Numbered from the stretch's first letter, positions 1 to 40,034 are shown. The stretch: 64,000 bases of DNA from Octopus sinensis (GCF_006345805.1 NC_042997.1:76260001-76324000), one strand, 5' to 3'. Program-made: numbers and translations. Notes: generated by a model not told the origin, from the letters alone.

Positions 1-882
1 TTCTGGTGACACTTTATCTTCTTTTTCACCTAGCTGAGGTGCTTCCTGCGGTTTGGGTTGGGGTTGGCATTCCGCCCTTACATGACCCTTCTTGCCGCAG
101 CCGAAACACCTCGGCTTTCTGCCCTCCACGAAAACTGTTATTCTCTCGTCTTCACTAATTTTTAATGTTTCTGGTATTTCCTCCAGTGTTTGCACTTCCG
201 CCTGAATGGCTATTACTATTTTCTGTCCTTTCTAAAATTCCTCTTCCTCCACTGTGGCCTGGAGGATGTTTATTTTTTCCTCCAGGCCTACCATCACTGC
301 TGCCACCAGACATTCGGCATCTGCCTCTGGGGGAATGTTGTTCATCGTAATTCTCGATGTTCTTTTCCCTCTATACAAGGGGAGGAGAACAATGTTTTCC
401 GCTTTAATCGGCTCCATAGATAGTTTTTTCGCTATCTCCTCTGTAGTGAAACGCACCTCCACTGTGCCGTATCTCTTTCCTCTGTTAATGTAAGTTATTT
501 TGTCCATTAATGGTTTAAGACAGTTCTCTAATTTTTTTTCTTCAATTTTTTGGATCATTTTTGTTGTCGTGTTAAATGTCTTATAAATTATTCTTTTTTT
601 TTCTATTTCATCGTGTTTTTGGATGTTTGTGACCACTGTCACTTCCGTGCCCTCTTTTTTTACACAGTCCGCATATTTTTCCAAATCTTCCACATTTATT
701 TTTTTAATCTTTTTACCGGCCACTTCAGAGAATTTTTTCGCTGGAGCTGGTGCTGGGTTTTCCTTTTTCTTTGGTGGCGTCGCCTCTTTTTTCTTTGGCG
801 ACACCGCCTCTTTTTTCCTTGGCGACATCGCCGGATACTCCTCTTCACTCGTCACGGGAGAATCAGAGAAGGGGGACTCCAT
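1..882 (-). pseudogene. Tx1 ORF1 (gag-like RNA-binding protein) with premature stop at 232-234
   Basis: Matches ORF 16046..17104. TGG of that copy (16442-16444) is TAG here. The CCHC knuckle CFGCGKKGHVRAEC follows in frame. Confidence 0.9.
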
Positions 883-1105
883 CTTGAACAGTTGGCTTCA
901 CAAGCCCTTGGTAACTTCAAGATAATTGATATTTTTCCCCCACGGAGGGGGGAACACCAACGCGAAGTCCTCGCGCGAAGGCTGACTTCGACAGTTAGAC
1001 AGCAATATACAAAACAGGTAGACAAACAGTAGAGAATAACAGAGATAATAATATGACAGCAAAAATATATCAACTTACAATAAACGCAAAAAAACACGAC
1101 CGCCG
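1..1105 (-). mobile_element. Tx1-group LINE, array unit U0 (5' part only; runs off window edge)
   Basis: About 98% identical by manual comparison to 16211-17320. 5' terminal motif CGGCGGTCGTGTTTTTTTGCG ends at about 1105. Confidence 0.9.
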
Positions 1106-1379
1106 TGGTTCAAATTGTTTCTTTATTATCCACAAGGGGCTAACGAAGAGGGGGACAATACATCATGATTTGTGGTCACGAGATACAGATGAAATTTACA
1201 TAAAATTGAGCTTTAAAAACGTTTACATGAAATTGCAAAAATTGAAGAAATCGAATGATACACAATGTTTTTAACAACAGTACGACATAAAAGGAACACA
1301 TGAAGTGGGAACACCAGGATTGCCGACCCCACGAGCCCTGTTTTTCCCACCGAAACTCGGCAGCCAACTTACAGCGTGT

Positions 1380-4300
1380 TCACGTGGCCCCTTTCACTCG
1401 CAGCAATCGTGCCACACGCTTCCATATTTTGTCGAACTCACACGCAGACAGACGCCTTTTCTCCAACTCCACCTTTCTTTTTAGGTGGAACCTGAAAAAG
1501 GTCACCAAGGCGGAATCAGAGATCATGGTGTCTGTCATTGCCGCTTTCATTCTAGTCTTCCATATACACTCCTTCGCTACTGCTACTGTACTGAGAAAGC
1601 AATGCTTACCTTCACTTGTCAAAAAGCTAGGCGAGTCAATTTTTATAATTGTCTCAGCCGATAGCTGTACTCTTCTTCCGTCCGACAACAGGTGTTCGGC
1701 ATATAGCCACACGTCCGAAACTTCCGGACACTGAACAATAGCATGCGAGACTGTTTCCAGATCCCGCTCGCATCTTGGGCAGTTCGATGGTCCACTCCAA
1801 CCATGCCTTGTGAGTTTATCCCGAACGGGTAAAGCTCCTCTGAAACATTGCCAGGTCGAAGACTTCTGGAAGTTATCCAATGTCTTCGTCCCGAACGTCC
1901 TTCGGAACAGGCTGTCTAACTGATTTCGATCGAGGCCCAAGGTCCTTCCTAAGGCATCGTCATTTCCGGCCTCTACCAACCTGCTATAAAAAGCTGCGGT
2001 GGTACCAAAGCCGCCGGCATTGCCCGACTTGCGGAAGTGGCAGAGTGCCTTATGGCACTCCGAATACCACATGCTCGATCTAAGTCTACGACGAAACCAG
2101 GTTTCTCTGCCACCGAAACTGACAAAGCTGGGGAACATCTGCCTCGCAATCGGGGACCACACCCGTTCACCATCCAGGTAGAGCTAAAGATGCCTTAACC
2201 TCAGCGCATCTCTGCGCATCCTCAGCCAAGGCATCCCTAAGCCACCCTTTAACGGTTTCTGACAGCAAATAGAACGTCTTACAAGAGGAGTGCTTCCCTT
2301 CCACAAAAAGTGGAAGATCTGCCTCTCCAACTTGCTTAACCACGAATCCGGACAAGGGACGACGGTCAGGCGGTAGGTGATGACCGATGCTAAAAACACA
2401 TTGGCCACCTCCGCCCTCCCTTTCAAGGATAGCCACCGTCCGGACCAAGTCCTGACCGCGTGAGCCACCTTGCCCGTCACCTCAGACCAGTTCTTTTCTA
2501 TCTGGAGATCTGGACCAAACCAGATCCCTAGCAGCTTAACCGGGTCCTCCGTCCAGCATCCCACAATGCTATTCGAAGGCATCGACTCCAGGTGCCGAGT
2601 TGCAAGCCGACCGATTTTTCCCGGTTAATCTTTGCTCCTGTCGCCGTCTCGTAAGCCTTGATGGCATCTCCCACATTACGCAGGAGTCCCACCTCGGTCA
2701 CGATGATGGTGATGTCGTCCGCATACGATGTTACAGAACCTCCACCTCCTGGATTCATCGGGATGGCGTTCAGCTTTCGCAGCAATGGCTCGAGAGCCAT
2801 CACATACAAAATCGGGGAGAGCGGACACCCTTGACGAACAGACTGTCTGATGCGGAACGGCTTCGAAAGGAAGCCATTCACCCGAACGATCGAGTCGATG
2901 TTATCGTACAATTGTATGATCCACCTGAGGAAGCCAACACCCAGACCGACCTGCGCCAGCACGGACACCAGGTACCGATGGTTCACCCTATCAAACGCTT
3001 TACTCTGGTCTAAATGGACCAATGCCCCACCTTTGCCAGAGTCATTCCCAAACCTCTCTATTGTGTAGCGTACTAGGTGAAGATTGTCCTGGATGGTTCT
3101 TCCAGGGACCGTACAAGTTTGTGCCTCCCCGATCAGACCACCCGCGACACGCGTCAACCTTTTCGCTAGCACCTTGGCCAAAATCTTCACCTCTGTGTTT
3201 AGCAGTGTGATGGGCCGAAAGTTGTCTATGTTGTCCCCCTTGCTCGGGTCCTTTCTGATCAGCGTCACCACTCCCCGACGTACAGATCTGGGAATGAACC
3301 CATTCTGTCGCCAGTTCGCGAAGACTCCGGTCAGCACGTTCCCGAACAAGTCTGGCATTCTCTTATATAGCTCGTAAGGTAAACCATCAATCCCCGGCGC
3401 CCTGCCTTCACCGCAGTCGACCAGGACCTCAGCTATCTCCTCAGGCGAGATCGACGCTTCACAGCTCTCCGCGTCCTGCCCCGAGAGGTGCGGCAACCCG
3501 GCGAGGATGTCCGTTAGGTCCACCCTCTCCTCCGGCCCGCCGTCGCCCCCAAAGAGCCGAGCGAAGTGCTCCTGAAACGTCCGACACATCTCCTCTGGTT
3601 CGGTGATCACATCGCCTTGCCCGTTCGTCACAGACTTAATTGTGGAATCGTTTCCACGTTGAGCCTCCACAACTCGTGCCCATCCGGCAGCCTTAATACC
3701 CTCGCACTCCATTGCGCGAATTCTAGCTCTGACGATACAACCCATATGTTTGGCTTCGAGGTGCTGGTTCAACTCCAGTCTCTTCAGCCTAACTTGGGCT
3801 CCATCGCCAGATCTCATGGCTTCCTCTAAGGCCTTAACTAGCCCCATCTCTTTCCTACGCCCACTAGTTACTAGACCTATGCTGTATCTAACGGACTCGT
3901 ACTTGATGGCTCTTTTGAGGGCGTACCACCATTTGTTGTTAATAATGGAACCGGTTAACTAATAACTCGATCCGTTTTCTGTACTCTTCAATAGCCAGAA
4001 GGGACTTATTGAGTTTCCAGTAGCCGGATCCCTTACTACCTAACTTATCTAGGTTCAGTTCGCCAGTGACCATCTTGTGATCGCTGTAACTGACCATGTG
4101 AAACTGTGGACACTTAACTAATCCTTTATCTATTTTTCTAATAAAAATTCTGTCTATGTAGGACCTGACAGACCCGTCGCCACTTGACCACGTCCAATGT
4201 GGAGCGTTCGGGAATTCAAGTCTGTAGGGATCTACCAGCTGAAAGCGACTCAGTAGATCCCGGAAGCCAGGGTTTGGTTTTCTATCTTTTGAGCCAACGC

Positions 4301-4748
4301 CATCGACGCGCGCATCGACTATGGCATTAAAGTCCCCTAGCATGACTATGGATTTTGACGTGCCAAGAAACTTCTCCAGACCTCGATAAAAATCAGTCTG
4401 ACTCGAATTAGGTGCGTATACTGCTACCAGCCTGATTTCTTTACCACAACTGAACGTCAGATCTAAGACGACCAGCCTACCTTCTGAATCAGAAAAAATC
4501 AACTTTTTCTCCGAGACACTATCTTTTTTAAGCAGGACCAACACCCCACTCCCGCCCACATGCTGTCCAGGAGAAATAAATCTCTCGTAGCCGTCCATGA
4601 GCGGGAGTAGATCTCTTGGCCCTTCGATTCGTGTCTCAGTAGCTACAATTACATTTAAATTCTGCGCGCTGATATCGTTTAGTAAACGACCTTGTTTCCA
4701 GTTCGCTACCAGGGCGCGCACATTTATACAACCAACGTAAACAGCCAT
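1380..4748 (-). pseudogene. Tx1 ORF2 (APE endonuclease, reverse transcriptase, CCHC domain); 2 frameshifts and 1 stop
   Basis: APE motifs ATETR, GDFNA, YIDRIF, SDHK. RT motifs FRPITLLN, DQSKAFDRV, RQGCPLSP, YADD. C-terminal CPRC...HAIVQC. Lesions at about 3953, about 2588 and TAG at 2184-2186. Confidence 0.95.
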
Positions 4749-4755
4749 AGTTTGC

Positions 4756-6138
4756 TTACCTTATTTCCTCTGGGTCCGGCCGTCGGGGGGAACCCGTCTC
4801 TTCTGCCTCCGAGGGCCGTGGAATCGGCGAGCTGCTGTTCTTCTTTTCTACATCCTTCAGGGCATCCCCCTTGCTCATTCTGGATGGACCTACATCTTTT
4901 CTAAAATCATTTGCTAACGTGTTGAACCCTCTCTGTCCCATCACGTAGCATCTCCAGTCTCCACACCTCTCTTCCATCTCCACCTCCTCCTCGATGTGTT
5001 TTGTCTCCACTCTACGCATCACTTCTCTGTTTGCGGTGTTCATTGCAACATATACCTTGTTTTCCTTCTCCGGCTTCTTCGCTTTCTTCACTTCTCTCTT
5101 CTCTTTACTTATGGTTTTCTCCGGGGAGGGATTATTGTGTTTTCGTTTTGTAGCAGCAACCTGTGACCACCCCTCCCCTACTTCTGTTGCAGGTGTTGTT
5201 TCTGTTGCCGCCACTTGAGAACTTGGCTTTGTGGGTTCGCCCTTCTCCTTCTCCGCCGGCTTGCAGTCTTTCTTAATGTGGCCCTTCTTGCCACAGGTGA
5301 AACACCTGGGCTTCCGGCCCTCCACCATTACTGCCATCCGGCTGTCTCCTATCTCGATAACCTCGCCTATCTCTTCCAAGACGTCCGGCTCGGCCTGTAT
5401 AATAATCTTTACTTTCTGTCCTTGCCACTTTTTGGCGTCTTCCACCGTGGCATCGCGAATTTCTATTTTTTCCTCCAGCCCTGCAGTGACTCCAGCCACT
5501 ATTAGTTCGGGCTCAACCTCTGGCGGTATGTTAGCAATTGTTATCCTCGAAATGCGCCTTCCTCTATAAATAGGGAGAAGGGTTATTGTATCTGTTTTCA
5601 GGGGTTTCATGGACTGCTCCCTTGCTTCTTCCTCTGTTCTGAACCTGGTTTCCACGGTACCATATCTCTTACCCCTGGTTAAAAATGTGATTTTTTCCCA
5701 GATGGGTAGCAAGCAAGCCTCCACTTCCTTTTCCGAAGAAAAGTCTATTCTCCTTTCCTTATTACGATATGTTTTATATATTATCGTCTTTCTCTCTATC
5801 TCTTCGCGAAATTCTTGCGTCTGATTCAGTTTAATTTCATACCCGTTTCGGGATACTATCTTTTTCACTTCTTCCAACTTGGTCAGGTCTATCTTTCTTT
5901 CTTTTGGGCTAGCCGCCTCGGCGAAGTTTAGCGCTTTCTTTGCCACGCTTGGCACATCTATATTTCTTCGTACCGCATTTCTGATTCCCCTACTTTCCTC
6001 TTCGTCCGAGGAAATGTCAGGTAAAGCTATTGTTTTTTCTAGGCTGGACATCTCTGGACTCAGGACCTGGGTTTGGTCTTCCGTTCTGTCCGCCTTCGGG
6101 CTGGCCATTATTGGCCTACCCCTCCTCAGCGGCTTCAC
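4756..6138 (-). CDS. Tx1 ORF1, 460 aa, RRM-like region plus one CCHC zinc knuckle
   Basis: Uninterrupted ORF. CFTCGKKGHIKKDC (CX2CX4HX4C). TRGKRYGTVE...RITIANIPPE block is shared with all array ORF1s. Confidence 0.9.
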   Translation of the reverse strand: MKPLRRGRPIMASPKADRTEDQTQVLSPEMSSLEKTIALPDISSDEEESRGIRNAVRRNIDVPSVAKKALNFAEAASPKERKIDLTKLEEVKKIVSRNGYEIKLNQTQEFREEIERKTIIYKTYRNKERRIDFSSEKEVEACLLPIWEKITFLTRGKRYGTVETRFRTEEEAREQSMKPLKTDTITLLPIYRGRRISRITIANIPPEVEPELIVAGVTAGLEEKIEIRDATVEDAKKWQGQKVKIIIQAEPDVLEEIGEVIEIGDSRMAVMVEGRKPRCFTCGKKGHIKKDCKPAEKEKGEPTKPSSQVAATETTPATEVGEGWSQVAATKRKHNNPSPEKTISKEKREVKKAKKPEKENKVYVAMNTANREVMRRVETKHIEEEVEMEERCGDWRCYVMGQRGFNTLANDFRKDVGPSRMSKGDALKDVEKKNSSSPIPRPSEAEETGSPRRPDPEEIR

Positions 6139-6290
6139 TAATATTAGTCAAATAAATTCGACTAACGAATTCAAAAAACAACTTACTTTTTCTTTTTGTT
6201 TTTGTTTTTTCCACAAATAACAACTGGTAGTAGAATACACTGACAAAATTTTACAGAGCGCAAAAAAACACGACCGCCGCTGTTCAAATC

Positions 6291-7964
6291 TTTTCTTTAT
6301 TACCCACTAGGGGCGACGAAGAGGGGACATAACAAAACATGGGAGATATAAAACATGATTAAAATTATGGGCAAATGAATATTAAAATGAAAAAATGATG
6401 ATATGAAAGCGATGCTAACGGCCCCCTCCGCCAGCATCACTTACCTGTCCTTTGGTTTTTGCCGTCACTCCAATTTCCAATAATAAAACTGATATTCTCC
6501 ATTCTCACTTCAAAACGATTCTCCATATTTTTCACGGATTCATCACTCAGACTCATCTCTTCCACCTCCCAATTCTCCCTTTCGCACCTTCTCATAAACT
6601 CATCTATTCTCTCCTTTTCAATCACTGCACACCTGGTCACACCTGAATCGCACCATGTATACCCTTCCATTACCCTTTTAACCTCTTTCTGTTCTGTCAT
6701 AATACAAATGTTCGGCCTGGGTTCGCTTTCAGTCTCTTGTCTGTCTGTGTTATTTTTTTGTTTGTTTTCTTGTTGGAGGGGAGCGGGTGGGTTCACTGCC
6801 TGCAGGGGAGGGGTGGGATTCAGAGGGTGTGGGTGGTGTTGGGGTGGGTTGGGGCTTCACACAGTTTTTATTTTTTTTTATTTTTCTCTTTTTTCTGCCT
6901 TCTTCCCTTTCTTGTTGCATCTCCTCTTCTTCTGTCGTTTCCTTTTCTGTTTGTTTCTCTTTAGTTTCTTCCTCTTTTGGGGCTTCCTCTTTTGGGGCTT
7001 CCGCAACGATTTCCTTTTTTTTTTCCTTTGGTGGGGGAGGGCAGTAGGCTCTTATGTGACCCCTCAGGCCACACTTGCAGCACCTGGGCGCCCTACCCTC
7101 CACCCACACTCTCATAATAATATTTCCAGTTTTTATACTGTCCGTAAGCTTTTCTATAACTTCCGCCTCCGTCTGTATGTTCATTTCTAGTGTGGCACCT
7201 CTCACGCCTTCATATTTCATAATGGCGTGGAGGATGTCCACTTTATCTTCATTTCCTTTGATAACCGCAACCGTTATTAATTCGCCCTCTAGGTGTGGAG
7301 GTATTCCAACCACCCTAATTCTGGTGGTCCTTCTATTCAAATACGAGGGGAACAAGTAAATCTTTTCTGTACTCACCACCTTGGCTGCTATATTCCTGGC
7401 TGCTTTCTCACTTTTAAATTGTACCGTTATGGTTCCATATTCTAATCCTTTTGTCATGTACACAATTTCTTCTCCTGTCTGTTTGAGAGCCTCTTCAATT
7501 GCTTCCATGTTAATCACTTCCATTTTTCTACCTCCATTCATAAATACTTTATATTTAATGGTTCTACGATGGAACCAGTCTCCGCGCCCTGCTGGAGGCA
7601 GCAGCTCAACCTCTCCATTCTCCTCCTCCTTCATGAACTCCTGGAAGTCCGTCAACTTAGCCAGGTCTATCTCTTTTTCTGTTGACTTCTTCGTTATACC
7701 TGCGTAGGTGCTTTCCATTTTTTCCACCGCCATTTGACGAATTTTCAGAGAAATTTCTCCCTTCCATCTCATCCGTTTGGTAGAGGCGGCTCATAGTCGC
7801 CTCAGACCGAAAAACGGCCTCCCGAACAGAAAACGTGCGACGCGCAGAACCAGTGCGACGCGAAACCGCACCAACCGACGTTCCAATTCCGCAACAACCA
7901 CAATTCACTTTTTGCTCTTTTTTCCTTTTCAACCGAATTTTACAGAGCGCAAAAAACACCGCCG
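6291..7964 (-). mobile_element. ORF1-only (half-L1/HAL1-like) Tx1 derivative, array unit U2
   Basis: ORF1 at about 6437-7772 (CCKCGLRGHIRAYC; +1 shift in an A-tract at about 6755), no EN/RT, same 5' and 3' terminal motifs as U1. Confidence 0.9.
6300..6437 (-). CDS. Putative 45-aa hydrophobic micro-ORF of U2 (MLAEGAVSIAFISSFFHFNIHLPIILIMFYISHVLLCPLFVAPSG)
   Basis: Manual translation. ATG overlaps the ORF1 stop (TGATG). Homologous open frames are present in U3 and U4. Confidence 0.4.
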   Translation of the reverse strand: MLAEGAVSIAFISSFFHFNIHLPIILIMFYISHVLLCPLFVAPSG

Positions 7965-7965
7965 T

Positions 7966-8124
7966 TCAATCTGATTTCTTTATTACCCACCAGGGGGCGA
8001 CACAGAGGGGGACACCACAAGACATGGGGACATAGAACATTACAATTAATTTTATGAAAAATGAGTTATTACATGAAAATAATGATAATATGAAAGCGAT
8101 GCTAAAGGCCCCATCCGTTAGCAT
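7966..8124 (-). CDS. Putative 52-aa micro-ORF of U3 (MLTDGAFSIAFILSLFSCNNSFFIKLIVMFYVPMSCGVPLCVAPWWVIKKSD)
   Basis: Manual translation; TGATG overlap with the ORF1 stop. Confidence 0.35.
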   Translation of the reverse strand: MLTDGAFSIAFILSLFSCNNSFFIKLIVMFYVPMSCGVPLCVAPWWVIKKSD

Positions 8125-9639
8125 CACTTAACTGTCCTTTGGTTTTCACTGTCACCTGAATGTTCATTCCCGATACGAAGACCTTCCATATCCATTCTTA
8201 CTCCGAAGTACTCCTCCATTTTTTCCACGAATTCATCGCTCATTCTTGTATCTTTCACCTCCCAATTCTCCCTTTCACACCTCAACACAAACTCGTCTAT
8301 TTTCTTCTTTTCAATCACTGCATATCTGGTCTCACCTATTTCATACCATTTATACTCTTCCATTACCCTTTTAACTTCTTTCTGTTCAGTCATAGTACAC
8401 ATGTACGGCCTGGGTTCGATTTCAAACTCTTGTCTGTCTGTATTATTTTTTTCTTTTGTTTTCTTGTTGGAGGGGAGCGGGTGGGTTCACTGTCTGCAGG
8501 GATAGGGTGGGTCTCAGAGGGTGTGGGTGGTGTTGGGGTGGATTGGTGTTCTATGTTATTTTCTTTTCCTCGTATTCTTCTCTTCCTCTTATTCCCAGCT
8601 TCCTTCCATTTCTGTGAATTCTCTTCTTCTACTGTCTCCTTCTCCTCTGGTTTCTGCTTCTCTCTCTGTAGTTCGGAATCCATTTCTTTCACTGGGGGAG
8701 GGCAGAAGGCTCTTATGTGACCCCTCAGACCACACTTGTAACAACGTGGAGCTCTGCCCTCCACCCACACTCTCATGATCACGTCTCCCAATCTGATGCT
8801 TTCCGCCAGGTCCACCAGCACATCGTTCCCTGCCTACACGTTCAGTTCCACTGTTACGCCTCTCCAGCCCTCGGTCTTAACCGAGGCATGGATGATATCC
8901 ACTTCCCCCTCGTGGCCGCTGATCACAGCCGCCACAATCCACTCGGCCTCAACGTTTGGGGGCACTCCCTCCACCCTTACTCGTGTAATCCTTCTATTTA
9001 GATATGTAGGCAAAAGTGTTACCTTCTCGGATTTCACCGCCTTCGCCGCCATCTTCCTTGCTGCATTCTCACTTTTAAACTGTACCACTACAGTACCATA
9101 CTTTGATCCTCGAGTCAGAAAATTAAATTCCTCCTCCGTTCTTCTCAGCGCCTCCTCTATCCACTCCATGTTTACAACTTCTATCTTCTTCCTTTCGTTT
9201 GCGAACACCCTGTATATAATGGTCCTTTTATCATACCATTCCTTTCTCTTGGGTGTCGGTGCTAGTTCGACCTCACCGCTATCCTTTTTCATATATTTCT
9301 GGTAACTTGGCAGCTTGGCCAAGTCCACCCCTTTCTCTTCCGCCTTCTTGGTTACACCGGCATAGGTATAACCCAGCTTTCGATCCATCATTCTCACTGC
9401 CTGTTCCAGTTCCTCCTCAGACGTAGACAAGTCTGATAGGGAATCAAAGTCCATTTCCTTCTGTCTGACGGACCGCAAACGGCCGCCCGAACAGAAAAAG
9501 TGTAACTCGTAGAACCAGTGTAACGCGAAACCGCATCAACGACGTTCAAAATTTCTACAACAACAACAATACTTTTTGTTCTTTTTTCTTTTTTAACCGA
9601 ATTTTACAGAGCGCAAAAAAACACGACCGACAGAGTGAA
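7968..9639 (-). mobile_element. ORF1-only Tx1 derivative, array unit U3
   Basis: ORF1 at 8124-9478 (CYKCGLRGHIRAFC; CAG>TAG at 8834-8836; A-tract shift at about 8450), no EN/RT, shared termini. Confidence 0.9.
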
Positions 9640-11358
9640 AATCTGATTTCTTTATTACCCACGAGGGGCTACACAGAGGGGACACTACAAACATTGGGGA
9701 CATAGAACATCACAATTACAAAGAATGAAAAATGAATTTTGAAAAATGATATTATGAAAGTAATGCTAACGGCCCCTTCCGCTAGCATCACTTACCTGTC
9801 CTTCGTACCCTATCATCCATTGTTCTCCCCAATTTCAATACACATATTCTCCAAGTCCATAGCATATAATTTTTTAAAATAATTCTTTGTCTTATCCCCA
9901 ACTACCCACTCCTCCACTTTCACATTTCTATTTTCGCACCACACTAACAGTCCATCCATTTCTTCCCTCTTCACCATTGCATATTTCCAGACCCCCTTTT
10001 CATACCCTAGATAACCCTCTAACATGTCTTTTATGTCCTCTCTTTCTTTTTTTAACCTACACAGAACAAAGCGCCCGGATTCGGTTTCAGTCTCTTGTCT
10101 GTGTGTATTACTTTTTTGTTTTCTTGTTGGAGGGGAGCGGGTGGGTTCACTGTCTGCAGGGATAGGGTGGGACTCAGAGGGTGTGGGTGGTGATGGGTTG
10201 GATTGGTGTAGCGTGTTGTTTACCTTTCTCCTTCTTCTCTTTCTTTTTTTCCTTCCTTCTTCCCACTCTTGCTGGATCTCCTCTTCTTCTGTCGTTTCCT
10301 TCTCTGTCTGGATCTCTTCTTCTTTATTTTCTTCCTCCCTTGGGGGTTCCGCAACAATTTCCTTTTCTCTTGGTGGGGTAGGGCAGAAGGCTCTTATGTG
10401 ACCCCTCAAGCCACACTTATAGCACCTGGGCGCCCTGCCCTCCACCCACACTCTCATAATCACGTCTCCCAATCTGATGTTTTCTGTTAGGTCCACCAGT
10501 ACCTCGTTCTCTGCCTGCACATTCAGTTCCACTGTCACGCCTCTCCAGCCCTCGGTCTTAACCGAGGCATGGAGGATGTCCACTTCCGCCTCGTGGCCGC
10601 TAATCACAGCCGCCACTATCCACTCAGCCTCAACGTTTGGGGGCACTCCCTCGACCCTTACTCTAGTAATTTTTCTATTTAGATACGTAGGCAAAAGTAT
10701 TACCTTCTCGGATTTCACCGCCTTCGCCGCCATCTTCCTTGCTGCCTTCTCACTTTTGAACTGTACTACTACAGTACCATATTTTGAACCTCTCGAAAGA
10801 AATTCGATTTCCTCTTCCGTTCTTCTTAGCGCCTCATTTATCCATTCCATATTCACCACTTCTATCTTTTTCTTTTCGCTTGCGAACACCCTGTATATGA
10901 TGGTCCTTTTCTCGTACCATTCCTTTCTCTTTGGTGGTGGTGCCAGTTCGACCTCACCGCTGTCCTTCCTCATTTACCTCTGGAAACCTGGCAATTTTGC
11001 TAGGTTTATTTCCTTTTCCTGTGCCGTCTTCTTTTTTGCAACTCCTGCGTACGTTTTCCTATTTTTTATCTCCACATTATTTACATCACCGATTTGCTCG
11101 TCTTCAGAGGTCGATGTCTCCGACAAGTTCTCAAATATCCATTCCTCCTCCGACTCCTCCACTAGGGAGTGGTCGTCCATTTCCCTCTGTCTGACGGGCT
11201 GAAAACGGCCGCCCGAACAGAATCAGTGTAACGCGTAGAACCAGCGAAACGCGAAACCGCATCAACGACATTCAAAATTCCGCAATAAAATAATTCAGTT
11301 TTTGTTCTTTTTTCTTTTTTACCGAATTTTACAGAGCGCAAAAAAACACGACCGCAGA
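9640..11358 (-). mobile_element. ORF1-only Tx1 derivative, array unit U4
   Basis: ORF1 at about 9788-11180 (in-frame TAA at 10974-10976 where U3 has TAT; CYKCGLRGHIRAFC), no EN/RT, shared termini. Confidence 0.9.
9669..9788 (-). CDS. Putative 39-aa micro-ORF of U4 (MLAEGAVSITFIISFFKIHFSFFVIVMFYVPNVCSVPSV)
   Basis: Manual translation; TGATG overlap at the conserved RTGK-stop position. Confidence 0.35.
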   Translation of the reverse strand: MLAEGAVSITFIISFFKIHFSFFVIVMFYVPNVCSVPSV

Positions 11359-12216
11359 TATTTCTTTATTACCCACTAGGGGCCACATAGAGGGGACAAT
11401 ACAATCTGATGATGGGGTCAGACACACGAATGGGTTTTACAAAAAAGCGAATTTTAAAAATTTACAGAAATTTACAAAAATAGCAAGAAATCGAATGTTG
11501 GAACAGACCGGAAGACATTACGGGTGGAGTGGGTGCGGGTTTAGCTCGGACCCCACGAGCCCCGCCTCCCCACTGATACTTTTGGTTTCGTTTGGTGTTA
11601 CATTTATGTTGTATCATTCACTCGCAACTTTCGTGCTACATCTTTCCATCGTTCTTCATACACTCTCTTAGTCAGGCATATTCTCTCCAGCCCTATCTTC
11701 CTTTTCAGGTGAAAGATAAAATAATTCATCAAACCAGGGCCGGAGATGAACTTGCCTGACTGTAGACCTTTCATTCTCGTCTTCCATATCACCTCTTTCG
11801 CAATTGCTACTACAACGAGAAAACGAAACTTACCTTCATTCGCGAGGAAATCCGGTGGGTCAATTTTTGTTATCGACTCAGTCGACAGCTGTACTCTTCG
11901 TGTATTTGACAACAGCTGTTCGGCATAAACCCACACCTCAGACACGTCCGGACAATGAACAATAGCGTGCGGGACGGTTTCCCTGTCCCGCCCGCATCTT
12001 GGACATATCGGACTGTCTCGGCCACCGTGCCTTGCGAGTTTATCCCGAACAGGTAGAGCTCCTCTGTAGCATTGCCATGCCAGAGACTTCTGGAAGTTGT
12101 CCAGTGTCCTCGGCTTGAACGTACGTCGGAACAGACTGGCCAGCTGATTATCGTCGAGACCTAGGGTTTCCCCCAAGGTATCTTCACATTCCGCCTCTAC
12201 CAACCCTCTATAGAAG

Positions 12217-12815
12217 TGTAACGAAAGTGTGAATATCTTCTCTGGACCTTTTGGGGGTGCGAGAAGCAATCACTATCCGTTGCTTTAATAATCCAGATTC
12301 TACCAGTCAGAAACAACAAGACGCAGACGTAAAAAATATATATCTACTTTATTCTCTCATGACAGTAACAATAAGTGGTATATCTGATATCCTTGGTATA
12401 GATGTGTCAGAGCTGAACTTTATCGCTGTAGAATTTACAGTGTTCAAATGCTAACGACACTGGTCAAAGATGGCGTCCGGAACAGGGAGAAGATGTGGTC
12501 TGCAACAATTCAGGTTAAAAGTCTTTTGGTAAAGGCTGCTGCTATGATCAAGTTCGGACAGAGAGAAAGAACTAACGTCCGTTGCCTTCAATCGGTGTGT
12601 CTCAAGCCAATGACTGCTGCTGGACGCTAGTGGTCAACGTCCTACGATCCCCCTGCCTCGGCTAACTGCCACGTAGGCAAAAGGGTCCTTCTTCCGGTGC
12701 TTCGCGCATGCGCGAGAGGGCCCTTCCTCTCTCTGCCTTGGTGAAGGCACAAACTCCGCACGCGCGAAACAGGAATGGACGGTGCGCGCGCGCACCGTTA
12801 TATAGGATCACTACA
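12217..12815 (-). mobile_element. Solo LTR (599 bp, Gypsy-like termini) inserted in U5 ORF2
   Basis: Termini TGTAAC...ACTACA, 4-bp TSD GAAG (12213-12216, 12816-12819). Removing it restores ORF2 TTFFYRG. AATAAA on the minus strand about 130 nt from the end suggests orientation. Confidence 0.85.
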
Positions 12816-14625
12816 GAAGAATGTGGTGGAACTCCCACTGCAGGCGTTACCCGAGCGACGGAATAGCAGGAGAGCCTTGTGACACTCCGTGTACCAAGTA
12901 CCAAGTTTCGATCTACGATTCAGCCAGGTTTCCCATCCACCGAAACTAGTGAACTTGGGAAACATCAGTTTTGCTAGCGGAGACCACACCCGTTCACCAT
13001 CCAGGTAGAGCCACAGATGTCTTAACCTCAGCGCATCATCAGCCAAGGCATCCCTAGCCCACCCTTTAACGGTTGTTGACAGCAAGTAGAGCGTTTCACA
13101 AGTGGTTTCCCGCCCTTCCACAAGAAGTAGAAGAGCTGTCTTTCCAACTTCATCAACCACGAATCAGGGCAAGGAACAACGGAAAGGCGGTAGGTGATAA
13201 CCGATGCGATAAACACATTGGCCACCTCCACCCTCCCTTTCAGGGATAGCCACCGCCAAGACCAGGTCTTGGTTACTGTAGCCACCCTGCTCGTTACCTC
13301 GCCCCAATTCTTCTCTATTTGGAGGTCTGGACCGAACCAGACCCCTAGCAATTTAATCGGACCCTCCGTCCAACGTCCCACGACGCTGTCAGGAGGCATC
13401 GACTTGCCTCTCCAGGTGCCGAGTTGCAAGCCGACTGACTTTTCGCGATTAACTTTTGCTCCTGTCACCGTCTCGTAGACCTCTATGGCCTTGCCTACTT
13501 TACATAGGTGGTCCATTTCGGTTACGATGATGGTGATGTCATCCGCGTACGCTGACACCGATTTTCCACTACCTGGCTGTCTCGGGATGCCGCTCAGTTT
13601 TCGCAGTAATGGCTCAAGAGCCATCACGTACAAAAGCGGGGAGAGCGGGCACCCTTGACGAACCGAGCACTTGATGTTGAACGGCTTCGACAAGAAGCCG
13701 TTCACCCGAACTACCGAGTCGATGTTATCGTAAATTTGTATAATCCACCTGAGGAAGCCAAGGCTCAGCCCGAACTGTACCAGGGCAGATACCAGGTAAC
13801 GATGGTCGACCCTATCAAAAGCTTTAGATTGGTCTAAATGGACCAGTGCCCCACCCTTGCCAGAATCACTATTAAACCCCTCTATAGTGTACCGCATTAG
13901 ATGGAGATTATCCTGAATGGTTCTGCCCGGAACGGCACATGTCTGTGCCTCCCCGATCAGACCATCCGCGACACGCGCCAATCTTTTCGATAACACTTTG
14001 GCCAAAATCTTCAACTCTGTGTTTAGCAGAGTGATGGGCCTGAAATTATCAATGCACTCCCCCTTGCTCGGGTCCTTTCTGACGAGAGTCACTACTCCCC
14101 GACGCACAGATCTGGGTATAAGCCCGTTCTGCTGCCAGTTCGCATAGACCTCCGCCAGTAGGTGCCCGAACAAGTCTGGCATACTCTTATATAACTCATA
14201 GGGTAGACCATCCAAACCCGGCGCCTTGCCCGCGCCGCAGTCCGCCATTGCCTCAACCACTTCCTCAGGCGTGATTGGCCCTTCACAGCCCTCCGCATCT
14301 CGCCCCGATAAGCGCGGCAGCCCGTCGAGTAGGTCCGTAAAAGCCCTCCTCCTATCCAGTCCGCCGCACTCACCGAAAAGCTGAGCGAAGTGCTCCTGAA
14401 AGGCCTCACACATCTCCTCGGGCTCGTTTATCAACTCACCTTGTTGGTTCGTCATAGATCGAATCGTGGCATCATTACCACGCTTGGCTTCCACCACTCG
14501 GGCCCATCTCACGGCGTTGATTCCTTCACATCCTATTGCGCGGATCCTAGCCCTGACAATGCAGCCCATGTGTTTGGCCTCGAGGTGCTGGTTTAACACC
14601 AGTCTCTTGGACGCCAGTCTCTTGG

Positions 14626-14795
14626 AGCAATCTGACCCGAGGATTCCTTTAATGTGGCAATGAGAGCCTGTGACTGTGCTGACATATGTGGTCTAATTGG
14701 GTTATACATCCTGGGCACCTTAGGGAAGAAATTCCCTTTGGTCCTCTTCAGTCTCCACAGGGCTTAGAAAGGACCTGATTTGACCCCAAGGCTTC
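14626..14795 (+). repeat. 170-bp exact copy of 18284-18453 (Penelope-like RT fragment) inside U5 ORF2
   Basis: No mismatches found in base-by-base comparison. Confidence 0.9.
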
Positions 14796-17689
14796 CTCTA
14801 ATTCCTTAACTAGAGTAGTTTCCCTCCTAGCCTCTCTAGCCACTACTCCTATGCTATATCTAATTGACTCGAACTTGATGGCTCGTTTGAGGGCGTACCA
14901 CCATTTGTTATTAATGATGGTACCAGATAGTGCCCTCTGAATTATAGTCCTAATCCGGTCTTTGTACTCCTTAATCGCCAAAAGGGACGTATTAAGTTTC
15001 CAGTAACCGGATCCTCTATTTTTAACCTTATCTATGTCAAGCTTACAGGTGACCATTTTATGATCACTGTAGCTGATCGGGTAAAACTGTGGACACTTAG
15101 CTATTTTTCTGTCTACTTTTCTAATTAGTATTCTATCTAAATATGACCTGGAAAATCCGTCGCTGTTTGACCATGTTCACAATGGAGCGTTCGGAAATTC
15201 CAGCCTATAAGTATCTGCTAGCTCAAAGCGGCTTAGCAGATCCATGAAGCCACTGTTACCTTTTCTATCTGAACGCGAGCCAACACAATCTACATCCGCT
15301 TTGCAAATCGTGTTAAAGTCTCCTAGCACAACTAATGAATGCGAAGTACCAAGAAAGTTTTCTAGTTCACGAAAATAATCACTTTGCCCTGTACTGTCGG
15401 GTGCGTAAATTGCAACCAGTCTGATAACTTTACCGTTACTGAACGTCAAATCCATGACGACCAGCCTACCTTCTGGATCTGCAAAAATTAACTTTTTCTC
15501 AGAAACCCGGTTTCTTTTTATTAGGACCAACACCCCACTTCCGCCAGGAGAGAAAAAACTCTCGTAGCCGTCAAACAGCGGGAGTAGACCTCTTGGTCCC
15601 TCTAACCGGGTTTCTGTAGCAACAATAACATCTAAATTACGCGACCTGATATCATGCAGGAAGCGACCTTGCTTCCAGCCTGCTCCCAGGCCGCGCACAT
15701 TCAAACAACCAACATAAATGTAATCCATTACTTGCCTTTATATCAGTGGTTCGGTTTTCTCTTTCTTTTCTTTGTTTAACTCTTTTTCAGGGCCTCGTGG
15801 GGGAGTCTGACGTAGGCCCTCGAATATATGTGGAGATGTCACATCCATTCTAAGTGGGCCTACGTCATGGAAGAATTCGGATTTTATCCGCCCGTAATCC
15901 TTCCGGCCTATTCTGTAAACTACATAGTCGTTCTTTTTCCCTATTCTCTCCACTTTGGCCATAGCTGCCAATACGTTTCCAAGTCTGTTATTTGATGCCT
16001 TAACGGCCATATACGGGTTCATCGACTCTCTTTTCTTTTTTAAGTTCACTCTGGGAGGGGTGGTTTCCGTTTTTCTTTTTTTTTTCTGGTGATTTTTGCC
16101 CACCCCTCCCCATTTTTCTTTTCCTCGCTCTGATTTTCCTCCGCCGCTAGTTCTGCTGCCTTTTTCACCTCCACACCTTCAGTCGTCCCTTCTGGGCCGC
16201 CCGGCGCTGCTTCTGGTGACACTTTATCTTCTTTTTCACCTAGCTGAGGTGCTTCCTGCGGTTTGGGTTGGGGTTGGCATTCCGCCCTTACATGACCCTT
16301 CTTGCCGCAGCCGAAACACCTCGGCTTTCTGCCCTCCACGAAAACTGTTATTCTCTCGTCTTCACTAATTTTTAATGTTTCTAGTATTTCCTCCAGTGTT
16401 TGCACTTCTGCCTGAATGGCTATTACTATTTTCTGTCCTTTCCAAAATTCCTCTTCCTCCACTGTGGCCTGGAGGATGTTTATTTTTTCCTCCAGGCCTA
16501 CCATCACTGCTGCCACCAGACATTCAGCATCTGCCTCTGGGGGAATGTTGTTCATCGTAATTCTCGATGTTCTTTTCCCTCTATACAAGGGGAGGAGAAC
16601 AATGTTCTCCGCTTTAATCGGCTCCATAGATAGTTTTTTCGCTATCTCCTCTGTAGTGAAACGCACCTCCACTGTGCCGTATCTCTTTCCTCTGTTAATG
16701 TAAGTTATTTTGTCCATTAATGGTTTAAGACAGTTCTCTATTTTTTTTTCTTCAATATTTTGGATCATTTTTGTCGTCGTGTTAAATGTCTTATAAATTT
16801 TTTTTTTTTTTTCTATTTCATCGTGTTTTTGGACGTTTGTGACCACTGTCACTTCCGTGCCCTCTTTTTTTTTTTTTTTTTTTACACAGTCCGCATATTT
16901 TTGTAAATCTTCCACATTTATTTTTTTAATCTTTCTACCGGCCACTTCAGAGAATTTTTTCGCTGGTGCTGGTGCTGGGTTTTCCTTTTTCTTTGGTGAC
17001 GTCGCCTCTTTTTTCTTTGGCGACACTGCCTCTTTTTTCCTTGGTGACATCGCCGGATACTCCTCTTCACTCGTCACGGGAGAATCAGAGAAGGGGGACT
17101 CCATCTTGAACAGTTGGCTTCACAAGCCCTTGGTAACTTCAGGATAATTGATATTTTTCCCCCACGGAGGGGGGAACACCAACGCGAAGTCCTCGCGCGA
17201 AGGCTGACTTCGACAGTTAGACAGCAATATACAAAACAGGTAGACAAACAGTAGATAATAACAGAGATAATAATACGACAGCAAAATATATCAACTTACA
17301 ATAAACGCAAAAAAACACAACTGCAGAGTGAAATTCTTCTTTTTTCTCTACATTGTATATTTTATAGACAATAGTCTTTTCTTTAATTTAATTTTTTATT
17401 ATCCATCTGGACTATTCCATTTCTGCATGCTAATTTTATTTTTAATTTATTCCCATTCATGTGAAACCACTTATTCAAGTTCGAGTCATTGATGCAATTT
17501 TATACCAATTGCTATTTTTACTTTTGTTATGTTACGATTATATTATACTTTAGTTTGATTTTAATTATTACTTACTACATATAATTCAATTGTTATTATT
17601 ATTTTTATTGTTAAAGTGAAAGCATCTGACATAAAATAGAGAAATGTTTTTGTTTCACTTTTAACACGTAATACTGAAATAGTGGAGAA

Positions 17690-17880
17690 GATATGATATT
17701 GCTATGGGCTCGCTCTAGGCAAGATGTTGAACATTTCTTTTGCCCATGAAACTACATGGACCCTAAGTAAGGCATGTGTAAAATTTGACTGAAATTGGTT
17801 GTGTAGTTCTCAAGTTTTAGGGAAACACACAGACAGACAGATACACATTCTCAGTTTTATATATATAAATATACATATAT
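17690..17880 (+). mobile_element. Possible non-autonomous Helitron/Helentron-type (HINE-like) end
   Basis: AAATTTGACTGAAATTGG...AGTT...(ACAG)n...TTTTATATATAT layout typical of such ends; no second terminus found. Confidence 0.3.
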
Positions 17881-18018
17881 GGTGCCTCAGCATGACTGCA
17901 GCTTTAAAGCTGAAACACTTAAAAGAGTAAAAGAATAAAGGAATATCATCAGTAGTTCTTATATCCCAAAAAGAAGCACACACTAAAACATTCTGACTAG
18001 CCATAACAAACTTCTAAA

Positions 18019-18145
18019 TATGTGTGTGAGTGTGTGTGTGTGTGTGTGTGTGCATGTGCGTGTGTGTATGTGTTTGTGTGTGTGGGTGTGCATGTGCATG
18101 TGTGTTTGTGTGTGTGTGTGTGTACATATGTGTGCACACACACAT
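18019..18145. repeat. (TG)n/(CA)n microsatellite
   Basis: Direct reading. Confidence 0.9.
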
Positions 18146-18146
18146 A

Positions 18147-20110: not shown

Positions 20111-20389
20111 ATTGAAAATTCCTAGCAGATATCAAGTAAGAACTCAGTATAAAGGAATAAGGTTATATTTCCAACAAGTAGATAACAGTAAACGTATATA
20201 GAATACAAATCCCAGGTAAATCCTCATGTATGGCAGGTAAATCCAACAATCCTTGCACATAATTTTAAGAAATTCAGAATATTAACAACAATCAATAATA
20301 TGTATGAAGAAAATCATATTTTTACAAGCTGAACCAATCTTAAAGGTGTAATATGGATGTGTAATAATGGAGTGGCTGGTGTGGTGGTG

Positions 20390-39993: not shown

Positions 39994-39994
<1 letters not shown>
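37763..39994 (-). mobile_element. 5'-truncated Tx1-group LINE flanked by (GA)n
   Basis: Same subfamily as 21625-27361; DQSKAFDRV, YADD; 3' end GGTGAATAAAGAAATA; (GA)n on both sides. Confidence 0.9.

Positions 39995-40034
<40 letters not shown>

What the first reader, a model, noticed from the sequence alone, without database searches (positions are those of the whole stretch)
1..17332. Head-to-tail array of six Tx1-group retroelements mixing autonomous and ORF1-only members
Seen: U0-U5 are all on the minus strand. Each 3' end (AATAAAGAAA, no poly(A)) abuts the intact 5' end of the next, with only about 4-18 nt between (junctions at about 1110, 6285, 7967, 9635, 11357). Members are not copies of one unit: there are three distinct ORF1 lineages, and all six 5' ends are essentially complete, which is unusual for LINEs. 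Known: Tx-group LINEs are often site-specific (Kibi, Koshi, Keno, Dewa, Mutsu), and Drosophila HeT-A (gag-only) and TART form mixed head-to-tail arrays. Inference: these families target each other's termini, building a self-extending, non-telomeric retroelement array in which ORF1-only and ORF2-bearing members cooperate.
Basis: partly seen in the sequence, partly recalled or inferred. Interest (0 to 1): 0.9.

Follow-up and report, generated by a model that had tools for sequence, protein, structure and literature searches.

The report
Self-stacking LINE array in an octopus genome
Six jumping genes of one related group, some carrying only the first of the usual two genes, sit head to tail at one spot in an octopus chromosome, and the same arrangement recurs at the matching spot and elsewhere in two other octopus species, which suggests these elements insert next to each other and build non-telomeric arrays.

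Summary
Six minus-strand non-LTR retroelements lie head to tail in window 1-17323. All have complete 5' ends and a ...GTGGnTAATAAAGAAA 3' tail without poly(A), and 6-17 nt separate them. There are three ORF1 lineages: A (U0, U5), B (U1) and ORF1-only C (U2-U4). Both ORF2-bearing copies are broken.

ORF1 of the ORF1-only copies diverged under purifying selection (dN/dS 0.11-0.30). The units are therefore independent insertions, not local duplicates.

Assembly error is unlikely. All four Octopus sinensis and O. vulgaris loci fetched through ORF1 relatives are also head-to-tail arrays, two of them mixed. One is the orthologous locus: it has the same flank boundary, lies 64 Mb into a 226-Mb chromosome, and holds different units.

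The short spacers are copies of the locus's own flank end, that is, target-site duplications. They measure 13-17 nt here, 16 nt in O. sinensis and 17 nt around a solitary Argonauta copy. The duplicated sequence differs between loci. The common feature of the targets is therefore the neighbouring resident element.

Best reading: a guild of L1/Tx1-type LINEs plus ORF1-only partners inserts beside resident 5' ends and stacks into renewing interstitial arrays. The recognition mechanism and the Tx1 phylogenetic placement are untested.

The parts
1..1102 (-). U0: the 5' 1.1 kb of a lineage-A element (5' UTR plus ORF1 232-882 with a premature stop). It is cut by the window edge, so the array may continue beyond position 1.
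   Evidence: 96.9% identical to U5 over 1.1 kb. The 5' motif is at 1085-1102.
1103..1117 (-). Spacer U1|U0, CAATTTGAACCACGG (type b): a copy of the locus target (TSD).
   Evidence: GATTTGAA lies at the orthologous flank boundary in O. vulgaris.
1118..6276 (-). U1: a full-length lineage-B element of 5.16 kb. ORF1 is 4756-6138 (460 aa, CCHC). ORF2 is 1380-4748 (APE, RT, zf-RVT) and is broken by an 11-nt deletion near 3957, a 7-nt deletion near 2587 and a stop near 2184.
   Evidence: It is 91.4% identical to a unit in the O. sinensis array L032.
6277..6291 (-). Spacer U2|U1, AGATTTGAACAGCGG (type b).
6292..7961 (-). U2: an ORF1-only lineage-C element of 1.67 kb. ORF1 is 6750-7772, with its C-terminal part in another frame (6437-6796). 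The 5' motif is shortened to CGGTGTTTTTTGCG.
7962..7974 (-). Spacer U3|U2, TCAGATTGAACGG (type b, shortened).
7975..9629 (-). U3: an ORF1-only lineage-C element of 1.66 kb. ORF1 is split into 8834-9478 and 8390-8821.
9630..9646 (-). Spacer U4|U3, TCAGATTTTCACTCTGT (type a).
   Evidence: It matches the 13 nt that precede U5.
9647..11354 (-). U4: an ORF1-only lineage-C element of 1.71 kb. ORF1 is 9813-10973 (386 aa) and its N-terminus is interrupted.
   Evidence: The model shows a tandem-RRM fold followed by a CCHC knuckle.
11355..11360 (-). Spacer U5|U4, TATCTG (truncated type a).
11361..17323 (-). U5: a lineage-A element of 5.97 kb. ORF1 is 16046-17104. ORF2 is broken by a stop near 15177, a 170-bp patch at 14626-14795, a 10-nt deletion near 13038 and a 603-bp insert near 12206-12809. 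The 5' motif carries two CpG transitions (CAGTTGTG...).
17324..17336 (-). GAATTTCACTCTG: the outermost (5'-side) copy of the target sequence, abutting unique flank.
   Evidence: It aligns with the O. vulgaris flank end GATTTGAAC.
17338..17880 (-). Unique AT-rich flank, orthologous to O. vulgaris OX597814.1 at about 64.24 Mb.
   Evidence: 91.7% identity to L035 3698-4261. CpG o/e of the flanking DNA is 0.19-0.20 (17324-21000 and 18001-20000), against 0.71-0.91 in the array.

Best explanation
The region is a stack of at least six independent target-primed insertions. They come from one guild of APE-type L1/Tx1-like LINEs (lineages A and B) and an ORF1-only non-autonomous partner family (lineage C).

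The members share the first 18-30 nt and the last ~50 nt. The shared 3' tail (CCCCTnGTGGnTAATAAAGAAA) is presumably what a common reverse transcriptase recognises. This is inferred.

Each new copy went in immediately upstream of the 5' end of a copy already present and duplicated the 13-17 bp that lay there. The same short locus-specific sequence therefore now sits in front of every unit and at the outer flank. Each insertion recreates the configuration 'flank end + element 5' end', so the site stays a target and the array renews itself.

What is shown: independent insertions; spacers that copy the flank; recurrence of arrays in other loci and species; occupation of the orthologous site by different units.

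What is inferred: the resident 5' end directs the endonuclease or RNP; growth is mainly at the 5' boundary; ORF2 supplied in trans by intact A/B-type copies elsewhere moves the ORF1-only family.
For: (1) Independent insertions.
- ORF1 of the ORF1-only copies diverged under purifying selection. U3-U4 gives dN/dS 0.11 (33 synonymous against 16 non-synonymous changes, P=2e-11). U2-U4 gives 0.20 (P=9e-16). U0-U5 gives 0.29 (P=0.02).
- CpG o/e is 0.71-0.91 in the array and 0.19 in the adjacent flank. Most divergence therefore predates insertion.

(2) The spacers are target-site duplications.
- Their lengths of 15, 15, 13 and 17 nt match the perfect 16-nt duplication GGATGTGATATAATGA around the lineage-C unit at the 5' edge of the O. 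sinensis array L032. The downstream copy of that duplication touches the first base of the next unit.
- They also match the 17-nt duplication around a solitary full-length Argonauta relative.
- The 13 nt before U5 (GAATTTCACTCTG) recur before U3 (GATTTTCACTCTGT).
- At the orthologous O. vulgaris locus the shared flank ends ...GAGAAAAAAGA and continues TTTGAA. This is the GATTTGAA(C) found inside the window array before U0, U1 and U2.
- In L034 the flank end CCCGACA recurs at internal junctions as CCCGATA and CTGATAA.

(3) The target is not one sequence. The duplicated sequences differ between loci. The constant feature is the adjacent resident element.

(4) Recurrence.
- L032 holds C, B, A, A, A. 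L033 and L034 hold A-type units. L035 holds at least 8 ORF1-only units followed by an A unit. That is 4 arrays out of 4 Octopus loci.
- More distant relatives form arrays in 2 of 5 loci: L028 and L030 are arrays, while L001, L029 and L031 are solitary.

(5) Polarity. Type-b spacers, which look ancestral by comparison with O. vulgaris, are distal. Type-a spacers are next to the flank. This is what growth at the 5' boundary predicts.
Against: - Only a handful of loci were seen, and they were found through annotated ORF1 proteins, which may bias the sample. No genome-wide count was possible.
- Some junctions elsewhere show little or no duplicated sequence. Examples are L032 A1|A2 and A2|A3, and the L035 internal junctions, which keep only TCACG. 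Other routes must also act.
- The 5'-terminal sequences differ between families and species, so no single protein-recognised 5' motif is evident.
- U5 should be the youngest unit under strict 5'-boundary growth. Yet it carries two inserts and CpG-decayed 5' bases.
- Type a and type b spacers differ at 6 of 14 positions, more than simple decay explains.
- A sequence like spacer a (GAACTTTCACCAACTG) lies in front of a unit at a non-orthologous O. sinensis locus. This hints that such leaders may sometimes travel with the RNA.
- The 3' end of the array is outside the window, so the final duplicated copy could not be checked.
Confidence: 0.55

Rival explanations
1. Plain sequence-specific targeting. 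The families recognise the short genomic sequence itself. Every insertion regenerates it on both sides as a duplication, so repeated hits pile up, as described for Tx1-mobilised SINEU-3. No recognition of resident elements is needed.
For: - Relatives are target-specific. The window copy at 37764-39995 sits in (CT)n, and a metagenome relative ends in (ATT)n.
- Kojima 2015 reports tandem SINEU-3 copies sandwiching a TSD (PMC4494074).
- GATT..TTTGA-like sequences occur at the array edge here and in L033.
Against: The duplicated sequences differ between loci: GATTTGAAC/GAATTTCAC, GGATGTGATATAATGA, CCCGAYA and TATTTTTAAAATTTGTA. Six hits from three families in one non-repeated 14-mer would need extreme specificity, which these other sites contradict.
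Confidence: 0.15
2. One-event concatemers. During a single target-primed reverse transcription the enzyme reaches the 5' end of one RNA and jumps to the 3' end of another RNA with the same tail, producing a head-to-tail chain of full-length copies.
For: - All units have complete 5' ends.
- Some neighbours elsewhere abut directly with 0-4 extra nt (L032 A1|A2|A3).
- Different families share the 3' tail.
Against: - The window spacers are 13-17 nt long and templated. They match the outer flank and the orthologous flank of another species.
- The L032 lineage-C unit has its own perfect 16-nt duplication.
Confidence: 0.1
3. Local tandem duplication or unequal crossing-over of one or two founder insertions, followed by divergence in place.
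For: Homogeneous arrays exist in related loci. L033 units are 98.6-99.8% identical and share the same internal deletion. L035 ORF1-only units are 94-99.7% identical. L030 units are 98.3-98.8% identical. McGurk and Barbash describe expansion of double insertions (10.1101/158386).
Against: - In the window the units belong to three ORF1 lineages.
- The ORF1-only copies differ mostly at synonymous sites (dN/dS 0.11-0.30).
- CpG content is still high.
- Their divergence therefore arose in active lineages, not in place. Unequal exchange may still explain the U0/U5 pair or parts beyond the window.
Confidence: 0.05
4. Assembly artefact that concatenates dispersed copies.
For: A 170-bp stretch inside U5 is 100% identical to DNA 3.5 kb away. 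This could be a polishing or assembly error.
Against: - Units and junctions are all different, so no collapse or repeat-joining is needed.
- The same architecture appears in independent assemblies of O. sinensis and O. vulgaris, including the orthologous locus.
Confidence: 0.02

Closest known systems
Target-specific Tx1-clade LINEs and their tandem insertions (Tx1L in Tx1D; Kibi in (TC)n; Koshi in (TTC)n; Tx1-Mar and SINEU-3 in Mariner-N4_AMi; Kojima and Fujiwara 2004; Kojima 2015, PMC4494074)
   Same: - ORF2 has an APE endonuclease, RT and a C-terminal zinc-binding domain.
- ORF1 has RRM domains and a CCHC knuckle.
- Close relatives are microsatellite-specific.
- Tandem copies sandwich a target-site duplication of about 16 bp.
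   Different: - The duplicated sequence is not a fixed repeat or gene. It differs from locus to locus.
- The constant neighbour is another member of the guild.
- The arrays mix several lineages and an ORF1-only family.
- Placement in the clade by phylogeny was not tested.
Drosophila telomeric HeT-A / TART / TAHRE arrays
   Same: Mixed head-to-tail arrays, all in one orientation, of gag-only and RT-bearing non-LTR elements that depend on each other. Array content turns over between species.
   Different: - The octopus arrays are interstitial. The orthologous site lies 64 Mb into a 226-Mb chromosome.
- Junctions carry target-site duplications.
- The 3' ends have no poly(A).
- The 5' ends are complete rather than variably truncated.
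- An endonuclease domain is present.
R1 tandem array of D. melanogaster and 'double insertion' tandems (McGurk and Barbash, 10.1101/158386)
   Same: Tandems are created when a second element enters the regenerated target, so a duplicated target lies between units. Later expansion by unequal exchange matches the homogeneous arrays L033, L035 and L030.
   Different: R1 uses a fixed rDNA site and one family. Here several diverged families stack at non-repeated sites.
HAL1 (half-L1) ORF1-only derivatives of mammalian L1
   Same: A long-lived non-autonomous LINE derivative that keeps a selected ORF1, lacks ORF2 and shares termini with ORF2-bearing elements.
   Different: - The clade and host differ.
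- The octopus ORF1-only families co-reside in arrays with their presumed partners.
- At least two unrelated ORF1-only lineages exist: C in the window, and another in O. vulgaris L035.

Membership tests
L1/Tx1-group non-LTR retrotransposon | ORF2 with an N-terminal APE-type endonuclease followed by a reverse transcriptase | tested here: met
   Exo_endo_phos E=2e-11. RVT_1 E=8.5e-28 and 1.7e-30 in U1 and U5.
L1/Tx1-group non-LTR retrotransposon | C-terminal zinc-binding domain after the RT | tested here: met
   zf-RVT (PF13966) E=8.8e-11 in U1 and 4e-9 in U5.
L1/Tx1-group non-LTR retrotransposon | ORF1 of the RRM + CCHC-knuckle type (classification recalled from Khazina and Weichenrieder 2009) | tested here: met
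   - zf-CCHC in U1, and a CX2CX4HX4C motif in all lineages.
- In the U4 model, residues ~20-180 have pLDDT ~80. They match tandem-RRM structures such as IMP3 RRM12 (E=3e-5) and hnRNP A1 UP1.
- Overall model confidence is modest (mean pLDDT 59).
L1/Tx1-group non-LTR retrotransposon | RT groups with reference Tx1-clade elements in a phylogeny | not tested
   No named reference sequences were available. The best RT hits are unnamed cephalopod proteins. O. vulgaris is reported to hold 13 recently active L1-Tx1 families with 421 insertions averaging about 5.4 kb (PMC13282606). This is consistent but is not a test.
Kibi-type (TC)n-specific Tx1 elements | Insertion within (TC)n, with the repeat on both sides | tested here: not met
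   The array spacers are not (TC)n. A related 5'-truncated copy at 37764-39995 does meet this feature, with (CT)n on both sides.
Telomeric retrotransposon arrays (HeT-A/TART type) | Location at chromosome ends, with addition onto the end and no target-site duplication | tested here: not met
   - 47 kb of other DNA lies on the 5' side of the array. The window holds only a (TTAGGG)3 at 54211-54234.
- The orthologous locus is at 64.24 Mb of 225.7 Mb.
- Duplications are present at the junctions.
Telomeric retrotransposon arrays (HeT-A/TART type) | Mixed head-to-tail arrays of gag-only and RT-encoding elements in one orientation | tested here: met
   The window array, L032 and L035.
Double-insertion tandems sandwiching a TSD | The sequence between units equals the sequence at the array's outer flank | tested here: met
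   - Window: flank GAATTTCACTCTG against U4|U3 GATTTTCACTCTGT.
- Orthologous flank GATTTGAA against the window type-b spacers.
- L032: a 16/16 duplication.
- L034: CCCGAYA.
- The downstream end of the window array was not visible.
Double-insertion tandems sandwiching a TSD | The target is one defined repeated sequence (rDNA, a particular transposon or a microsatellite) | tested here: not met
   The duplicated sequences differ among the loci. No RNA gene or tRNA lies in the window. The flank has no other copy in the window.
ORF1-only non-autonomous LINE (HAL1-like) | ORF1 kept under selection, ORF2 absent, termini shared with ORF2-bearing elements | tested here: met
   - The units are 1.67-1.71 kb with no RT.
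- dN/dS is 0.11-0.30.
- The first 30 nt are identical to U1, and the last ~45 nt are 80-91% identical to U1 and U5.

The most novel reading that the evidence does not exclude
These families may be obligate array-dwellers, an interstitial counterpart of the Drosophila telomere elements.

Their only polyadenylation signal (AATAAA) sits in the last 10 nt of the element. In an array it is followed 15-26 nt later by the U-rich start of the next unit (GTGTTTTTTTG). That start could act as the downstream element for 3'-end formation.

Transcripts would then end in the spacer or in the next unit's 5' end. Such read-through 3' ends, or a protein that binds the shared 5' terminus, would guide new copies to resident 5' ends.

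Arrays would then persist at fixed chromosomal sites across species while their members turn over completely. ORF1-only families would be specialised residents.
Probability: 0.2. Interest if true: 0.8.

Novelty: new variant of a known kind. Interest (0 to 1): 0.65.

Why it matters
Target-specific LINEs are known to choose repeated genes, microsatellites or other transposons. Arrays that mix gag-only and RT-bearing elements are known from insect telomeres.

A guild that chooses the ends of its own members at ordinary chromosomal sites would be a different safe-haven strategy, and it keeps the same site occupied across species with different members. It would give a natural system for studying how a LINE machinery reads a DNA or RNA cue for precise, full-length insertion. 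That question bears on programmable insertion tools.

It would also show how ORF1-only parasites of LINEs persist, and how transposon stacks seed large tandem repeats in the repeat-rich cephalopod genomes.

Tried and rejected
- My first working model was 'all spacers are copies of one specific target sequence', with no role for resident elements. I dropped it as the main model once other loci showed different duplicated sequences.
- 'Spacer is part of the element RNA'. U0 and U5 are 97% identical yet carry different spacer types. The spacer type follows position in the array, not family. The orthologous flank contains the type-b sequence. A spacer-a-like leader in L032 keeps a minor version of this idea alive.
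- Degenerate seventh element in the flank. A TGGATAATAAAAAA about 65 nt upstream of U5 looked like a tail, but the flank has no other similarity to the units. It is conserved as flank in O. vulgaris.
- A conserved 3' hairpin. Only a 4-bp stem at -2.4 kcal/mol was found, so no claim is made.
- Metagenome scan with the 3' tail. The 23 hits had no similarity to the units and appear to be chance.
- Word-index search with the U4 ORF1 found nothing. A profile search later found 1086 relatives.
- No Rfam family or tRNA at or near the target.
- Internal similarity of type-b spacers to the lineage-C 5' UTR is at chance level.
- An early BLAST mixed loci L001 and L002. This was corrected.
Full report
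**1. What is in the window**

The minus strand of 1-17323 holds six non-LTR retroelements, head to tail.
- The 18-nt 5' motif CGGTCGTGTTTTTTTGCG occurs five times, only at unit starts. Shuffles give 0.02 expected.
- The 3' motif GTGGRTAATAAAGAAA occurs five times on that strand, against 0.11 expected.
- Reading the junctions gives spacers of 15, 15, 13, 17 and 6 nt between AATAAAGAAA and the next 5' motif. There is no poly(A).

The units are:

| Unit | Coordinates | Type |
|---|---|---|
| U0 | 1-1102 | lineage A, cut by the window edge |
| U1 | 1118-6276 | lineage B, full length |
| U2 | 6292-7961 | lineage C, ORF1-only |
| U3 | 7975-9629 | lineage C, ORF1-only |
| U4 | 9647-11354 | lineage C, ORF1-only |
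| U5 | 11361-17323 | lineage A, full length |

U1 and U5 encode ORF1 plus an ORF2 with an APE endonuclease, RVT_1 and zf-RVT. U2-U4 are 1.67-1.71 kb and hold ORF1 only.

ORF1 falls into three lineages:
- A is U0 and U5, 94.5% aa identical.
- B is U1, 49% identical to A.
- C is U2-U4, 55-91% identical among themselves and 31-38% to A and B.

The termini are conserved against this divergence. The first 30 nt of U1, U3 and U4 are identical. The last ~45-50 nt are 80-91% identical across lineages.

A model of the U4 ORF1 shows two RRM-like domains followed by a CCHC knuckle. A profile of the ORF1s finds 1086 relatives among 1.84 billion representative proteins.

**2. State of the copies**

Neither ORF2 is intact.
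- U1 has an 11-nt deletion near 3957, a 7-nt deletion near 2587 and a stop near 2184.
- U5 has a stop near 15177, a 10-nt deletion near 13038, a 603-bp insert near 12206-12809, and a 170-bp patch at 14626-14795.

These are real indels, not homopolymer slips. ORF1 is also interrupted in U0, U2, U3 and U4. 'Autonomous' should therefore read 'ORF2-bearing but defective'.

**3. Independent insertions, not local duplicates**

Between the ORF1-only copies most changes are synonymous.

| Pair | dN/dS | P against neutrality |
|---|---|---|
| U3-U4 (N-terminal ORF1 piece) | 0.11 (33 synonymous, 16 non-synonymous) | 2e-11 |
| U3-U4 (second ORF1 piece) | 0.30 | 5e-6 |
| U2-U4 | 0.20 | 9e-16 |
| U0-U5 | 0.29 | 0.02 |

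CpG observed/expected is 0.71-0.91 across the array. It is 0.19 in the next 2 kb of flank and about 0.4 in the rest of the window. The copies thus diverged as active lineages and arrived fairly recently.

This also shows that the ORF1-only family is a long-lived element that depends on ORF1, and not a dead deletion product.

**4. Host and relatives**

The RT is closest to cephalopod proteins: 64% to Argonauta hians. ORF1 of lineage A is 81-85% identical to an Octopus sinensis protein and 64% to an O. vulgaris protein.

Relatives show target-site behaviour:
- A related family in the window, 70% nt identical to U1/U5, is present as 5'-truncated solitary copies. The copy at 37764-39995 lies inside (CT)n, as Kibi elements do (PMC3812793).
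- A metagenome relative ends ...GTGGCCAATAAAAGAAATC followed by (ATT)n.
- A full-length, nearly intact Argonauta relative is solitary and flanked by a 17-bp duplication, TATTTTTAAAATTTGTA.

The 3' tail CCCTnGTGGnYAATAAA(A)GAAA is conserved across these species.

**5. Arrays recur**

All four Octopus loci reached through ORF1 relatives are head-to-tail arrays.

| Locus | Position | Content |
|---|---|---|
| L032 | O. sinensis CM016867.1, 70.97 Mb | C unit (83% to U4), B unit (91% to U1), three A-type units (88% and 71% identical to each other) |
| L033 | same chromosome, 76.6 Mb | one full A-type unit, then at least four internally deleted units, 98.6-99.8% identical |
| L034 | O. vulgaris OX597840.1, 31.9 Mb | three A-type units, 99% identical |
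| L035 | O. vulgaris OX597814.1, 64.24 Mb of 225.7 Mb | at least eight ORF1-only units of a further lineage (period 1.78 kb, 94-99.7% identical), then an A-type unit |

Among more distant relatives (46-51% RT identity), two of five loci are arrays. L028 has a 7.5-kb period. L030 has a 6.4-kb period with intact 643-aa and 1158-aa ORFs. L001, L029 and L031 are solitary.

An assembly artefact is therefore very unlikely.

**6. The orthologous locus**

Window 17880-17338 aligns to L035 3698-4261 at 91.7% identity. L035 is therefore the orthologous site.
- Both species share the flank up to ...GAGAAAAAAGA.
- In O. vulgaris the sequence TTTGAA follows, and then the first ORF1-only unit.
- In the window species the sequence AGAATTTCACTCTG follows, and then U5.

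The same site carries an array in both species, but with different members. No unit pair reaches the flank's identity. The best is the L035 A-type unit at 86.5% to U5.

**7. What the spacers are**

Two types occur.
- Type a: GAATTTCACTCTG at the flank, a truncated ATCTG before U4, and GATTTTCACTCTGT before U3.
- Type b: GATTGAACGG before U2, GATTTGAACAGCGG before U1, and AATTTGAACCACGG before U0.

Four observations identify them as target-site duplications.
- Type b matches the end of the orthologous flank in O. vulgaris (GATTTGAA).
- Type a matches the window's own flank end.
- In L032 the lineage-C unit at the array's 5' edge is bracketed by a perfect 16-nt duplication, GGATGTGATATAATGA, at 2479-2494 and 4186-4201. 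The downstream copy touches the first base of the next unit's 5' terminus.
- In L034 the flank end CCCGACA reappears at the internal junctions.

The spacers are thus duplications of locus-specific DNA. Their size is the same as around solitary copies (16-17 bp).

The duplicated sequences differ between loci, so the elements are not aiming at one sequence. The common feature of the targets is the resident element beside them. Tandem copies sandwiching a duplication are known for Tx1-mobilised SINEU-3 (PMC4494074) and for R1 (10.1101/158386). In those cases the target is a fixed repeat.

**8. Most likely mechanism**

A new RNP nicks about 13-17 bp upstream of a resident 5' end and again at that end. 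It inserts a full-length copy and duplicates the intervening bases. The new 5' end, preceded by the same bases, becomes the next target.

Type b looks ancestral by the outgroup and is distal. Type a lies next to the flank. This distribution fits growth at the 5' boundary, as does the L032 lineage-C unit.

How the resident end is recognised is unknown. The element's only AATAAA lies in its last 10 nt. It is followed 15-26 nt later by the U-rich start of the next unit. Read-through transcripts that carry neighbour sequence are therefore plausible and could guide priming. This is speculation.

Homogeneous arrays (L033, the L035 ORF1-only units, L030) probably expanded by unequal exchange after founder insertions. 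Junctions that abut directly (L032 A1|A2|A3) leave room for template jumping.

**9. Points against, or unexplained**

- The sample of loci is small and possibly biased.
- The array's 3' end was not seen.
- U5 does not look young.
- Type a and type b spacers differ at 6 of 14 positions.
- A spacer-a-like leader precedes a unit at a non-orthologous O. sinensis locus.
- The 5' termini differ among families.
- Clade assignment to Tx1 is not phylogenetically tested. It is consistent with reports of recently active, mostly full-length L1-Tx1 families in O. vulgaris (PMC13282606).

**10. Verdict**

Three corrections apply. The ORF2 copies are defective. The spacers are target-site duplications. Cooperation between members and the recognition mechanism are unproven.

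I rate it a new variant of a known kind (target-specific LINEs and tandem insertions), with interest 0.65.

Noticed in passing
window 14626-14795 and 18284-18453: A 170-bp stretch inside U5's ORF2 is 100% identical to DNA about 1 kb beyond the array's 5' flank. In U5 it is followed by a 19-nt local duplication (CCAAGAGACTGG...). Its CpG o/e is 0.10, like the flank and unlike the element. It looks like a templated repair patch, or else an assembly or polishing error.
   Followed up: partly
window ~12206-12809: A 603-bp CpG-rich insert (o/e 0.98) lies in the C-terminal part of U5's ORF2. It is absent from U1 and is bounded by similar ~10-nt sequences (CTTCTGTAGTG / CTTCTATAGAG). Its origin is unknown, and no other copy exists in the window.
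   Followed up: partly
window 37764-39995 (-) and 21645-27362 (+): Two 5'-truncated solitary copies of a related family (about 70% nt identity to U1/U5, 86% to each other). The first lies inside a (CT)n microsatellite, as Kibi elements do. The second is interrupted by a 2.7-kb block of other repeats at 22609-25343.
   Followed up: partly
window 21497-21572 and 27420-27492: A ~75-nt sequence (about 90% identical copies) lies on both sides of the second solitary copy, offset 60-75 nt from its ends. It may be a flanking duplication or a small repeat. This is not resolved.
   Followed up: no
window 54211-54234: A short interstitial (TTAGGG)3-4 tract. No other telomere-like sequence occurs in the window.
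   Followed up: partly
window 22772-23354, 45842-45984 and related 300-bp repeats at 22609, 28400, 34596, 42114, 43661: A family of about 300-bp dispersed repeats with internal 60-63-bp tandem units (GGTGCTTTTACGTGCCACCGGCACGG...). It is probably an abundant SINE-like element.
   Followed up: no
L030 (ENA ERZ21867824 ctg108305l) and L028 (ERZ26052130 ctg11195c): More distant relatives (46-51% RT identity) in unidentified hosts form tandem arrays of full-length units. L030 has a 6.4-kb period, 98.3-98.8% identity, and intact ORF1 (643 aa) and ORF2 (1158 aa). L028 has a 7.5-kb period and 94.7% identity.
   Followed up: partly
L035 4262-18504 (O. vulgaris OX597814.1): A second, unrelated ORF1-only lineage (ORF1 36% identical to lineage A) forms at least 8 tandem units at the locus orthologous to the window array. 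The ORF1-only lifestyle has therefore arisen more than once in this guild.
   Followed up: partly
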